The notes below the pieces were generated by a model, which ran no database searches, was not told the origin of the DNA, and saw nothing but the letters and a program-made list of their open reading frames with translations. Of a DNA stretch of 64,000 nucleotides, positions 50,302 through 54,259 are shown one piece after another; the stretch's first letter is position 1, and each line of letters begins with the position of its first letter. The stretch covers positions 20,150,001 through 20,214,000 of the forward strand of contig OZ365110.1 of NCBI GenBank assembly GCA_977030845.1. Reading direction: 5' to 3'. The translations under genes and the position numbers were made by a program. The stretch is from Fimbriosthenelais zetlandica. Its lineage: Eukaryota.

Positions 50302-52666
50302 TGACTATTAAAGTGAATGGAAGGCATCTGACGCAGTGACGGATGCCCCGACCATCTATAGCATTATAATGTCACAGGACCACCTGCACCAGCGGTCTCT
50401 TCACACTGATTCCTACTGACGAGCTGGTCACCTCATGGAGGCTGGCTTAATTTCCGGTCCTTTCAAATGAGCCCGGGTGAAGGCGTCCGCGACTGGGCGG
50501 TCATGATTTGGCACCGAAGAGACAAACTGATTCACAGCAAGAGAGTTGGATTTAAAGCAAACTGGCCTAATGCCTGAATCCAGAGGTGGGCTAATCGAAA
50601 TGTCACCTTAAAGTAATGTCATGTCACTCAACGATAGCCTGGCCGGTATGTTCCATGCCTGGACCAACTTCCTTTGCTCAGACTCCATGCAATATGGCAA
50701 TCATTTTTTAATTGCAGAAGTGTTTATTTGCAGAAGGAGAAATTACCTAATAAGGAAAAGGAGAAGGCACCTAAAACAGATGTGATAGCATTGTGAAATA
50801 TGATTCTGGTGGCCGTCTACCTGTGATTGCAAGTACTTGGGCCTGAAAGTTTGTTTTCCGCTTATATTAATCTGCTCACTATTGCGGTGGATCACATGTC
50901 ATGTCACTTAATGCCATGGTTTACCTGTACAGGTATTGGGTTACTTATGTAATCTCACCCTTTATGAGGGAGATGGTTATGATTTGGTTCAGCCTTGAAC
51001 ATTTCCATGTCAATTTGTGTGCCTGAAACTACACTGTTAGAAGGGATTACAACAGAAAGTAACAGAATTATTATTCATATTTGGAGACGTCTTCCAAACG
51101 TTTTCCTATTATAGGAAAATTGTTATTCATAGCATTTTGAGGGATCGAAGATAAGGGCCTGCAATTTTACTGTTAATATTACATATATATATATTACATA
51201 ATATTATAGGCCTTAAAACCTTACTATAAAATCTTTGTTAAAAGGCTTTGGATCATTGTTAAGGTTAAAAGAACCTTCCTTGAGTATATTATTATTTTGA
51301 AATCCATTGTGAAGTATATATAATAGAACAGCCTCAAGAATCGGAAAAAAGAAGCAGCAGATTCCAGTTCATTGAGTGTGAAAGAATGAAATCAGGCTTG
51401 CCAATTCCTCCAGCCTTACACCCTAGGTGAGGTGTGGCATACACTCAGGCCATTAGGAGGTCTGAGGACCATTGGTATGGCTGGTCCTACGTCTTCTCAA
51501 TGATCCCCAATTTCGCCCACGCTCGTGCATTCAGTAGGAAATGCAAAGTCGGGCCCATCGTTATCGGTTCGCCTGTTCGGACGTCTACACTGGGAAGACT
51601 TAGCCTTAGGAAGCCACTGAGCCTTTATTATATACCGGGTGCCATAATTGACTAGAATGCTGGTCTTCTTTGACCAGGGATTTTCACTGGATCTTATGTT
51701 AAAAAGTAGTTTACAATTAAAAAATATGAGTGGTTGATGCTTTAGTTCATAAACATTATTTTTATGTGGTTCACCGACCAGGTTTGAATGAAATAAAATA
51801 ACCTGTTCACTGCTCTGGGAATGTAATATGGGAAGGTGTAAAAAAAGCCTGGGGAGTCTGCTTGCCCGCTGAATAATTCATGGCTCGTCACGAGAAGCGC
51901 AAAACGGGGGTCAGAGATTTAGCCAAATGTGATCAGAATGAGCATCAGATGACAAGACAAGCATCAGCTATATAATATATATGTGTGGCCAGGATTAGTC
52001 TGTCCCATTCTGATGTATATCCATTGCAAAATCAGAATATAAATGAGCTATATCTCCTTTATCATGCGATTAGGTAAAGCTTCTGAATTGATGGTCAAAA
52101 GCATTGTAATAAGCAAAATGAATTTGAATATTCCTGGCTTATCACCTAATCAATTATATTGGATATAAGGACAACAAGATAACTAGACATACGCATGACA
52201 CTAGATGTTTGATAAAAATGCGATAAAAAGATAACTATATATAAAATGAGCATGAACAAAACTGTCACGAAATATCTCATAGTACAGAGAAAGAGGAGCC
52301 CGAACAGAAATTGAACAATGCCTTGTCAGTGAAAGTTATTTTGGTTGGAATATCCTTGTTTGACAAGTCATTAGAGAAGGAGAATTAGGCTTGTTTGCAG
52401 ACTTTGTGTCTGGATGGTCGCAGTGAAACCAGTGAGCAGTATTCCCCATTAGACACAATGTGACATGGTGGAACGCCCAGGATGACTATGGAAAGGCTGG
52501 CCCACACTTTCCAGATTGCATTTAAAGGTCAGCAGTATTGAACTCGTGAAGGATAACATCCTTCAGTGTGAAAAACTATCTTCTTGCATGTATTTACTTC
52601 TGTACACGGTGCTCCGTGGGTAATAGTCTTCTCGCACAAAAACTAGGCAACAGGTGTAGTCAAAGA

Positions 52667-53409
52667 CACTGTGGAACACCGGAGGGGGGTAACGCGCGTA
52701 ACCTTCCTCAAAATGGCGGCCAAAACACCGCTCGCTTCGGTAAGTTTTCCTCACTTTTCTCCCATTTAGAGTTATCAGAATGACATCAAAAGTAGTGAGA
52801 CTGTTAGGAAAAGTGTGCTTGATCTTCTCGATCTGTTTACTCGGTCTAGTTCACGGCAAAAGCCGCTAAAATAGCCCTCAAAGTGCGAGTCGGTGAGGAA
52901 GGTAACTGTCCTGAGGGAGGAAGGTAATTCCACCATATGAACAGAGATGAGGAGGGTAACTATCGTTAGTTTTGCTGAATGTACCAACCATTTACAGCCA
53001 CTTTATCAAAATATTGACATAGGAAACTTATGAACAGAAGAAGGTTGCACTGTTGCATCCTATTTAACCGTATTTTGTATGAAATACATGTGGAAACATA
53101 ACATATTATTTAGTCAGTTACCTTCCTCAATCACAGAGTTACCCTCCTCAGGTGTCAAAACCGATGACAGTTACCTTCCTCACCGACTCGTACTTTGAGG
53201 GCTATTTTAGCGGCTTTTGCCGTGAACTAGACCGAGTAAACAGATCGAGAAGGTCAAGCACACTTTTCCTAACAGTCTCACTACTTTTGATGTCATTCTG
53301 ATAACTCTAAATGGGAGAAAAGTGAGGAAAACTTACCGAAGCGAGCGGTGTTTTGGCCGCCATTTTGAGGAAGGTTACGCGCGTTACCCCCCTCCGGTGT
53401 TCCACAGTG
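52667..53409. mobile_element. Young non-autonomous DNA transposon (MITE/foldback), Transib/RAG-like (CMC) ends, 743 bp
   Basis: TIRs 52667-52910 and 53166-53409 (244 bp, 2 mismatches seen). Termini CACTGTG...CACAGTG. 5-bp TSD AAAGA at 52662-52666 and 53410-53414. No coding capacity. The family assignment is less certain than the element itself. Confidence 0.9.
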
Positions 53410-54259
53410 AAAGACCTCCCTTTCTGGAAGTACATAACCTTTGCCGGTGAAACGCTGCTTTTACTATTATCTTCATAATAAGTGTGCCTATATGCAGTAT
53501 CAATCATTTTAAAACAAATACATACATGTATAGTTCTACAGAAGGAATGTTTGATATTGATTCAAATTATGCATCAAAGTTTATATTACTCGAGCTAATC
53601 TGAGTAATGCGTGTGATTCCATCAAAACAATTGATCCAGTATTGCGAGTCTTACAACTGATACCCTTTGTCACACCCAGCCCTCAATTCATGGTGACTTT
53701 GATCTACAACATGCAGGCAGAGGGTCCATGTTTGCAAGTCGCTGCTCGTATGTCACATCAAAGCTGCAAGTGTTTGAATTCTTGCCAATAAATCAAACAT
53801 GTCCCAAGTTCTTATACTTGCCAGACTCACAGAAAGGCCGGAAATCTGGCCTTTCCTTCAAACCATGTAGTATAGATCCATCTGGCCATTGTCCTAGCCT
53901 CGGTTCAATCTGGTTGATTCCATCCACCCTTTCGTTTTTTGTAAGAGTATAAAATGGCTTTGCTAAAATATTACATGAAAAGAGAAATATTCAAGTATGG
54001 GAGAATGATACATGCTTCATTAGATCAAAACAAATACCTCGCAACAACTTATAAATATTATTTTGCCTTTTGTAGCGGAACAGGATAGCACATGACTACA
54101 TGTATAGGTTTCCTTATCGTACCTGTATAAGCCGCCATGTTGTTTTGGATCGTCTAACATGATGCATGCTATAACTGTAGCATGTTATCATGAGTCTGTC
54201 CGTCCCTCTCCCTTTCTCCTTTTGAACATATACTTTTGTAGACTATAGAAGCCGTCGGC

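What the first reader, a model, noticed from the sequence alone, without database searches (positions are those of the whole stretch)
52662..53414. Recently inserted Transib/RAG-like non-autonomous transposon with RSS-heptamer-like ends and 5-bp TSD
Seen: 244-bp TIRs with only 2 mismatches, ends reading CACTGTG inward, and an exact AAAGA duplication on both flanks. It is far younger than the surrounding decayed repeats. Established: CAC-initiated termini plus a 5-bp TSD characterise Transib and RAG-like (ProtoRAG) transposons. The V(D)J RSS heptamer is CACAGTG and the ProtoRAG heptamer is CACTATG; CACTGTG is one base from each. Inference: an active Transib or RAG-like transposase may exist elsewhere in this genome. 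Caveats: no ACAAAAACC nonamer at 12 or 23 bp spacing, the TIRs are unusually long, and the TSD is AT-rich. A CACTG-type EnSpm/CMC element with a coincidental 5-bp match remains possible.
Basis: partly seen in the sequence, partly recalled or inferred. Interest (0 to 1): 0.75.

Follow-up and report, generated by a model that had tools for sequence, protein, structure and literature searches.

The report
Non-coding Transib-type jumping gene family
This is a real 743-base cut-and-paste transposon with no gene of its own, one of several dozen near-identical copies that each duplicate exactly five bases on insertion, as Transib/RAG-type elements do; no transposase of that type and no RAG-like gene could be found in the genome, so it is an ordinary small mobile element, not evidence of an active RAG-like system.

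Summary
Window 52667-53409 is a 743-bp element with 244-bp terminal inverted repeats (2 mismatches), CACTGTG...CACAGTG ends and an exact AAAGA duplication.

It belongs to a family with 71 recognisable ends in this 447-Mb genome.
- All 18 intact copies examined have a perfect 5-bp target duplication, each of different sequence.
- One sibling copy has a paralogous empty site.
- Two identical copies sit at different sites.
- Thirteen full-length copies differ from their consensus by 0.5-2.6%; the window copy differs by 1.4%.

Five-base duplications rule out CACTA/EnSpm and Chapaev and fit only the Transib/RAG-like group.

No parent element was found. Longer copies are nested retrotransposon insertions, and lone ends are truncated solo repeats. 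Six-frame Pfam searches of the whole genome for RAG1 (the model Repbase Transib transposases map to) and RAG2 found nothing, while two control families were detected down to 23-28 bits. Positions 8-10 of the ends vary among related families, unlike RAG-like TIRs.

TIR identity is not an age clock here, because the two arms show mirrored substitutions.

The scan had already reported another copy of this family (s1-193440).

The parts
52662..52666 (.). left copy of the 5-bp target-site duplication (AAAGA)
52667..52910 (+). left terminal inverted repeat, 244 bp, starting with the heptamer CACTGTG. Blocks conserved with a 72%-identical sister family: positions 1-7, 11-14 (CACC), 21-25 (GGGTA), 43-60 (A-rich block), 89-114 and 136-153
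52911..53165 (+). non-palindromic internal part (255 bp), with no ORF and no Rfam match. Longer family members carry about 960 bp more at element position about 418
53166..53409 (-). right terminal inverted repeat, 244 bp, ending CACAGTG
53410..53414 (.). right copy of the 5-bp target-site duplication (AAAGA)
52696..52710 (+). outermost copy of a repeated 13-15-nt motif (GTWACCYTCCTCA type). Further copies lie at 52894-52908, 52912-52927 and 52948-52961 (inverted) and at 53115-53129, 53136-53150, 53168-53182 and 53365-53378, four per half in mirror arrangement. Candidate transposase-binding sites (inference)
   Evidence: D1, I3-I6. The GGTAAC core is kept in the sister family

Best explanation
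The element is one copy of a young, non-autonomous, foldback-like (MITE-type) cut-and-paste DNA transposon family of the Transib kind in the broad sense. It encodes nothing. A DDE transposase supplied in trans would recognise the CACTGTG-led ends, and probably also the repeated GGTAAC-containing motifs. It would excise the element and reinsert it with a 5-bp staggered cut, which gives the 5-bp duplication.

Shown: element structure, family membership, the 5-bp duplication rule, one paralogous empty site, identical copies at different sites, internal-deletion derivatives, and nested insertions in older copies.

Inferred: the chemistry (nick and hairpin as in Transib/RAG) and the identity of the transposase, which was not found in this assembly.
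For: - Structure and duplication.
- Copy number: at least 40 scored matches at 85-99% identity, and 71 ends within 2 mismatches of the first 21 nt against 0 for the reversed control.
- Duplication rule: 18 of 18 intact copies have perfect 5-bp TSDs of different sequence, and two older copies interrupted by nested insertions have 1-2 TSD mismatches.
- Empty site: a paralogous empty site for the L021 copy carries a single GAGCT where the filled site has GAGGT twice.
- Recent movement: L004 and L005 are identical in sequence but have different flanks and TSDs, 157 kb apart on one chromosome. Kimura 2-parameter (K2P) distance to the consensus is 0.5-2.6%, mean 1.1%.
- Literature: Transib is described as the only eukaryotic DNA-transposon superfamily with 5-bp TSDs, with CAC-led heptamer ends (PMC1131882). 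Chapaev has 3-4-bp TSDs (PMC4079192).
Against: - No autonomous partner was found. Copies of 3.6, 4.0, 5.4 and 14.6 kb are MITEs with nested Pao/BEL, gypsy-like or other insertions. Lone ends are solo TIRs.
- Pfam RAG1 (PF12940) is the model to which Repbase Transib transposases map (PMC5751038). It gave no candidate in a six-frame search of the genome.
- There is no A-rich nonamer at 12 or 23 bp.
- Targets are AT-rich (TSD GC 29%), whereas insect Transibs and RAG prefer GC-rich sites.
- The 244-bp TIRs are much longer than the 38-bp consensus termini described for Transib families.
Confidence: 0.72

Rival explanations
1. The family is mobilised by a transposase too divergent for the Pfam RAG1 model: either a deep Transib/RAG-like branch or an undescribed superfamily that also makes 5-bp duplications. 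It may be encoded by one of the longer related elements that could not be fetched.
For: Pfam RAG1 gave no candidate, although the same search type reports hits down to 23-28 bits for other families. Identical copies at two sites imply recent transposase activity. Related ends occur as inverted pairs 3.8, 6.8, 6.8 and 10.05 kb apart. There is no nonamer, and targets are AT-rich.
Against: The sensitivity of the first-look filter for a 653-position, intron-split, divergent transposase was not measured with a positive RAG1/Transib control. Autonomous Transibs are typically present in only one or a few copies (PMC4411706), so one could be missing from this assembly or individual. Every long pair that was inspected turned out to be a nested insertion.
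Confidence: 0.17
2. It is a non-autonomous derivative of a RAG-like (RAG1L-RAG2L, ProtoRAG-type) transposon.
For: A 5-bp TSD and a CAC-led heptamer are shared with RAGL transposons, and non-autonomous RAGL elements are known (PMC7204232). Positions 9-11 (AAC) match the protostome RAGL TIR consensus.
Against: Six-frame searches found no RAG1 (PF12940) and no RAG2 (PF03089) candidate anywhere in the genome. RAGL TIRs keep an A-rich block at positions 8-10 next to the heptamer. In this group positions 8-10 are the most variable (GAA, AAA, TTT, TGT, TGA, AAT, TTA, TAA). Positions 5-8 do not fit the protostome consensus.
Confidence: 0.05
3. It is a CACTA/EnSpm or Chapaev (CMC) element, and the 5-bp match at this copy is a coincidence.
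For: The ends start CACTG, and there are repeated subterminal motifs, as in CACTA elements.
Against: 18 of 18 copies have exact 5-bp duplications of unrelated sequence, and a paralogous empty site confirms 5 bp. CMC elements make 2-4-bp duplications. Pfam Transposase_21 gave only four sub-threshold hits, none near family members.
Confidence: 0.02

Closest known systems
Non-autonomous Transib elements (Transib-N families of insects; Kapitonov and Jurka 2005, PMC1131882)
   Same: 5-bp target-site duplication; ends beginning CAC and ending GTG, with a heptamer one base from the Transib consensus CACAATG; no coding capacity; many copies while the parent is rare or undetected.
   Different: No A-rich nonamer-like block 23 or 12 bp from the heptamer. 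The 244-bp identical arms are far longer than the 38-bp consensus termini described for Transib families. Targets are AT-rich with a weak C|A...T|G pattern rather than GC-rich. No Transib transposase was detected in the genome.
RAG-like (RAGL-B/ProtoRAG) transposons and their non-autonomous derivatives (PMC7204232, PMC10462144)
   Same: 5-bp TSD, CAC-led heptamer, no nonamer, nearly symmetric ends.
   Different: The A-rich TR2 block at positions 8-10 is not conserved here. No RAG1L or RAG2L sequence was detected.
CACTA/EnSpm and Chapaev (CMC) elements
   Same: CAC...GTG termini and repeated subterminal motifs.
   Different: Their duplications are 2-4 bp. Here the length is 5 bp in every copy.
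Foldback-type MITEs in general
   Same: Very long, near-perfect inverted arms around a short loop; deletion derivatives; solo arms; arm-to-arm homogenisation.
   Different: This is a structural class, not a transposase family, so it says nothing about the enzyme.

Membership tests
Transib superfamily | 5-bp target-site duplication | tested here: met
   18 of 18 intact copies are perfect and 2 older copies have 1-2 mismatches. A paralogous empty site confirms 5 bp.
Transib superfamily | termini 5'-CAC...GTG-3' with an RSS-like heptamer | tested here: met
   CACTGTG/CACAGTG. The heptamer is invariant in 78 ends of this and related families.
Transib superfamily | A-rich nonamer-like block about 23 (or 12) bp from the heptamer | tested here: not met
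   The positions at 12-bp and 23-bp spacing read GGGGTAACG and CGTAACCTT. The nearest conserved A-rich block is at positions 43-60.
Transib superfamily | autonomous partner encoding a Transib (RAG1-core-like) DDE transposase | tested here: inconclusive
   No copy with these ends encodes one. PF12940 gave no candidate in the genome, while control families were found. No positive RAG1/Transib control was available, and five candidate long relatives were not fetched.
RAG-like (RAGL/ProtoRAG) transposons | convergent RAG1L-RAG2L gene pair in the autonomous element | tested here: not met
   PF12940 and PF03089 gave no candidates in the six-frame genome search. The sensitivity caveat is the same as for the Transib transposase search.
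RAG-like (RAGL/ProtoRAG) transposons | conserved A-rich TR2 block directly after the heptamer (positions 8-10) | tested here: not met
   GAA in this family. Positions 8-10 vary freely among related families, while positions 1-7, 11-14 and 21-25 were fixed by the search pattern. The consensus is taken from PMC7204232.
CACTA/EnSpm | 2-3-bp target-site duplication | tested here: not met
   The length is always 5 bp.
Chapaev | 3-4-bp target-site duplication (TWA for Chapaev3) | tested here: not met
   5-bp duplications of varied sequence. The definition is from PMC4079192.

The most novel reading that the evidence does not exclude
This family and its sister families may be driven by a transposase lineage that the RAG1 model cannot see: a very deep Transib/RAG-like branch or a new superfamily that also makes 5-bp duplications. 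It would have been recently active in this animal. The 10.05-kb element with identical ends at G000:C27:8844431-8854483, or the 3.8-kb pair at C21:4639205-4642971, is the candidate parent.
Probability: 0.12. Interest if true: 0.6.

Novelty: new member of a known kind. Interest (0 to 1): 0.25.

Why it matters
Taken alone it matters little: it is one more small non-coding DNA transposon family. Its value is as a clean example. The copies give an unambiguous 5-bp duplication rule, so the element can be classified without a transposase.

It also leaves a small open problem. The family moved recently, yet no RAG1/Transib-like gene is detectable in the assembly. If the parent turns out to be an unusual transposase, it would bear on how widely the RAG/Transib way of cutting DNA is spread among invertebrates.

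The mirrored substitutions are a caution for genome scans: near-perfect long TIRs do not date an insertion.

Tried and rejected
1. Longer copies as parents. L031 (3.6 kb), L036 (4.0 kb), L037 (5.4 kb) and L035+L038 (14.6 kb) are MITEs carrying nested elements: Pao/BEL gag and integrase, a gypsy-like integrase and zinc knuckle, and another roughly 800-bp repeat. A 1705-bp form (L034) is simply the longer non-coding progenitor of the 743-bp form.
2. Lone ends as ends of a larger element. Ten lone ends share only the first 83-243 bp (mostly 209-243 bp) and then run into unrelated DNA.
3. Pfam scan of 62 ORFs of at least 140 aa from all fetched DNA. It found only retroelement, tyrosine-recombinase/DUF3504, Tc5 and host domains, and no RAG1.
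4. Six-frame genome searches. RAG1 and RAG2 gave nothing. Transposase_21 gave only sub-threshold hits elsewhere.
5. Empty-site allele. No public sequencing run was listed, so insertion polymorphism could not be tested. The left flank is single-copy, so this copy has no paralogous empty site.
6. Metagenome scan for the terminal 27-mer: no match.
7. Rfam: no match.
8. Candidate long relatives. I did not try to obtain those letters another way.
9. No Transib or RAG1L protein sequence could be obtained by reference, so no direct protein-versus-genome search was run.
10. The organism was not identified. Pao/BEL elements and a Spaetzle/NGF-domain ORF in the fetched loci point to a metazoan.

Full report
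**Observation.** Window 52667-53409 is a 743-bp element. Its outer 244 nt on each side are inverted repeats that are 99% complementary, around a 255-nt core. The ends read CACTGTG and CACAGTG, and AAAGA lies immediately outside both ends. As single-stranded DNA it folds into one long hairpin, z = -66.8 against shuffles. It has no Rfam match and no ORF of note. The finding's coordinates, 52662-53414, include the two duplicated pentamers.

**Family.** The window is G000:C10:20150001-20214000 of a 447-Mb assembly.
- A DNA search with the element returned 116 matches from 40 scored candidates. Thirteen are full-length copies at 96-99% identity.
- The first 21 nt occur 71 times within 2 mismatches, against 0 for the reversed control.
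- I cut out every copy with both ends present. Seventeen, plus a 3.6-kb copy, carry a perfect 5-bp direct repeat outside the ends, each of different sequence.
- Two older copies interrupted by large insertions have 1 and 2 mismatches in the pentamer.
- For the copy in L021, a paralogous copy of the flanking repeat in L039 runs straight through the insertion point. It has a single GAGCT where the filled site has GAGGT on both sides.
- The 5-bp duplication is therefore a property of the insertion mechanism.
- Targets are AT-rich: the duplication averages 29% GC and the 35-bp site 40%.
- Counting both strands, 21 of 36 duplications begin with A and 16 of 36 are preceded by C, a weak palindromic C|A...T|G preference from a small sample.

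**Age and activity.**
- Thirteen full-length copies differ from their consensus by K2P (Kimura 2-parameter distance) 0.5-2.6%, mean 1.1%.
- The window copy is at 1.4%. It groups with L002 and L003, which are 0.8% away.
- L004 and L005 are identical in sequence but have different flanks and duplications, 157 kb apart on the same chromosome. The family therefore moved very recently.
- Shorter forms of 309-788 bp and a longer non-coding form of 1705 bp are internal-deletion relatives.

**The TIRs are not a clock.**
- Substitutions in the arms come in mirror pairs far more often than chance allows. The pairs are 18/726 and 88/656 in the window copy, 29/715 in L008, and 234/510 in five copies.
- That gives 8 pair-observations against 0.26 expected, reached in 0 of 20,000 simulations. 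These are about 4 independent events.
- The arms are therefore homogenised against each other, most simply by repair within a hairpin or by template switching (inference).
- The two mismatches between the arms of this copy are private single-arm changes.
- In any case, a DNA transposon inherits its arms from its parent copy.

**Search for a parent.**
- Inverted pairs of ends 3.6, 4.0, 5.4 and 14.6 kb apart are ordinary copies interrupted by other elements. These include a Pao/BEL element with DUF1759, Peptidase_A17 and integrase domains, a gypsy-like integrase with a zinc knuckle, and a roughly 800-bp repeat present in many copies.
- Ten lone ends share only the first 83-243 bp (mostly 209-243 bp) and then continue into unrelated sequence. 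They are solo arms.
- A Pfam scan of 62 ORFs from all fetched DNA found no RAG1 domain.
- Six-frame searches of the whole genome with Pfam RAG1 (PF12940) and RAG2 (PF03089) found no candidate at all.
- The tool warned that nothing rang in its control genomes, so I ran controls. DUF1759 recovered the known site in L037 and hits down to 28 bits. Transposase_21 returned hits of 23-27 bits. The first-look filter is therefore permissive.
- Muszewska et al. assign Repbase Transib transposases to PF12940 (PMC5751038).
- The negative result is real evidence against a recognisable Transib or RAG1L gene in this assembly. It is not proof, because no positive RAG1/Transib control was possible and no Transib protein could be brought in by reference.

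**Relatives.**
- Next to the copy in L030 lies the left end of a sister family, 72% identical over 300 nt. It has the same heptamer and conserved blocks at positions 11-14, 21-25, 43-60, 89-114 and 136-153, plus the repeated GGTAAC motifs.
- A framework pattern keeping only the heptamer, CACC and GGGTA finds 78 ends against 0 controls. About 20 of them belong to sister families.
- Positions 8-10 are the most variable part of these ends. RAG-like TIRs conserve an A-rich block exactly there (PMC7204232; PMC10462144).
- Sister-family ends form inverted pairs at C31:85804-87863 (2.06 kb), C21:4639205-4642971 (about 3.8 kb), C21:4570160-4576919 (6.8 kb), C21:4237799-4244632 (6.8 kb) and C27:8844431-8854483 (10.05 kb, with identical 25-nt ends).
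- These are the obvious places to look for a parent. No RAG1 or RAG2 hit falls in them, since there were no hits anywhere.

**Classification.**
- Kapitonov and Jurka describe Transib as the only eukaryotic DNA-transposon superfamily with 5-bp duplications. Its ends are a CAC-led heptamer plus an A-rich nonamer 23 bp away, and it prefers GC-rich targets (PMC1131882).
- RAG-like transposons share the 5-bp duplication and the heptamer.
- Chapaev elements have CAC...GTG ends but 3-4-bp duplications (PMC4079192).
- This family meets the two diagnostic features, the 5-bp duplication and the CAC heptamer. It fails the nonamer and the target composition, and its transposase is unknown.
- I therefore file it as a Transib-type element in the broad sense (confidence 0.72). 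A divergent or undescribed transposase lineage is the main alternative (0.17). A RAG-like parent is unlikely (0.05). CMC is excluded (0.02).
- Members of the Transib superfamily have been reported from an annelid, Helobdella (figure legend in PMC4411706). Such elements in a worm, if that is what this genome is, would not be new.

**Relation to earlier notes.** The scan already reported another copy of this same family (s1-193440). It corresponds to L005 at C10:30085938-30086680, which I analysed. That agent had one copy and called the Transib assignment a best guess. The family-wide duplication table, the empty site and the genome-wide negative searches are new here. Other notes describe further CAC-ended, 5-bp-duplication families in this genome, which I did not examine.

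**Verdict.** The feature is real and well defined but ordinary, and there is no support for an active RAG-like system. The one loose end worth a follow-up is the missing transposase.

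Noticed in passing
window 52667-53409; loci L001-L013: Substitutions in the two 244-bp arms occur as mirror-image complementary pairs (18/726 and 88/656 here, 29/715 in L008, 234/510 in five copies): 8 observed against 0.26 expected. The arms of these foldback elements are homogenised against each other.
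   Followed up: partly
L043, L045-L053 (e.g. G000:C1:31261506, C21:3318734, C19:8381257, C1:30430697): Ten solo arms. Nine break between element positions 209 and 243, near the inner edge of the TIR, and one breaks at position 83. Each joins unrelated DNA. This looks like palindrome-driven deletion.
   Followed up: partly
G000:C27:8844431-8854483; C21:4639205-4642971; C21:4570160-4576919; C21:4237799-4244632; C31:85804-87863: Inverted pairs of ends from sister families, 2-10 kb apart. These are candidate longer or autonomous relatives and were not fetched.
   Followed up: no
L004 and L005 (G000:C10:29928480-29929222 and C10:30085938-30086680): Two copies identical over 743 bp with different flanks and duplications, 157 kb apart. 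This suggests local hopping. Family copies are concentrated in a few chromosome regions (C1 20-33 Mb, C11 24-37 Mb, C10 8-14 and 29-30 Mb).
   Followed up: partly
L037:1627-4950 (G000:C11:31712626-31715949): A Pao/BEL-type retrotransposon fragment inserted into a family copy. It has long open frames of 516, 380 and 251 aa (DUF1759, Peptidase_A17, integrase zinc finger).
   Followed up: partly
L042:5-952 (G000:C1:28677004-28677951): An open frame with DUF3504 plus a phage-integrase (tyrosine recombinase) domain, as in Crypton-type or DIRS-related elements. It lies directly beside a family copy.
   Followed up: no
L031:3411-4214 (G000:C25:22371910-22372713): A roughly 800-bp repeat with about 35-bp inverted ends nested in the 3.6-kb copy. 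More than 30 copies at 76-96% identity lie elsewhere in the genome, indicating another abundant non-autonomous family.
   Followed up: no
window 52710-52745 (element positions 44-79): Inside each arm there is a Kozak-like AAAATGG start, nine codons, then GTAAGT. This could be a relic of a transposase first exon and splice donor. The ATG block is conserved in the sister family but the GTAAGT is not.
   Followed up: partly
L045:4191-5698 (G000:C1:31265196-31266703): Overlapping long open frames with the same peptide start recur every 286 bp, which points to a tandem repeat (satellite-like array).
   Followed up: no
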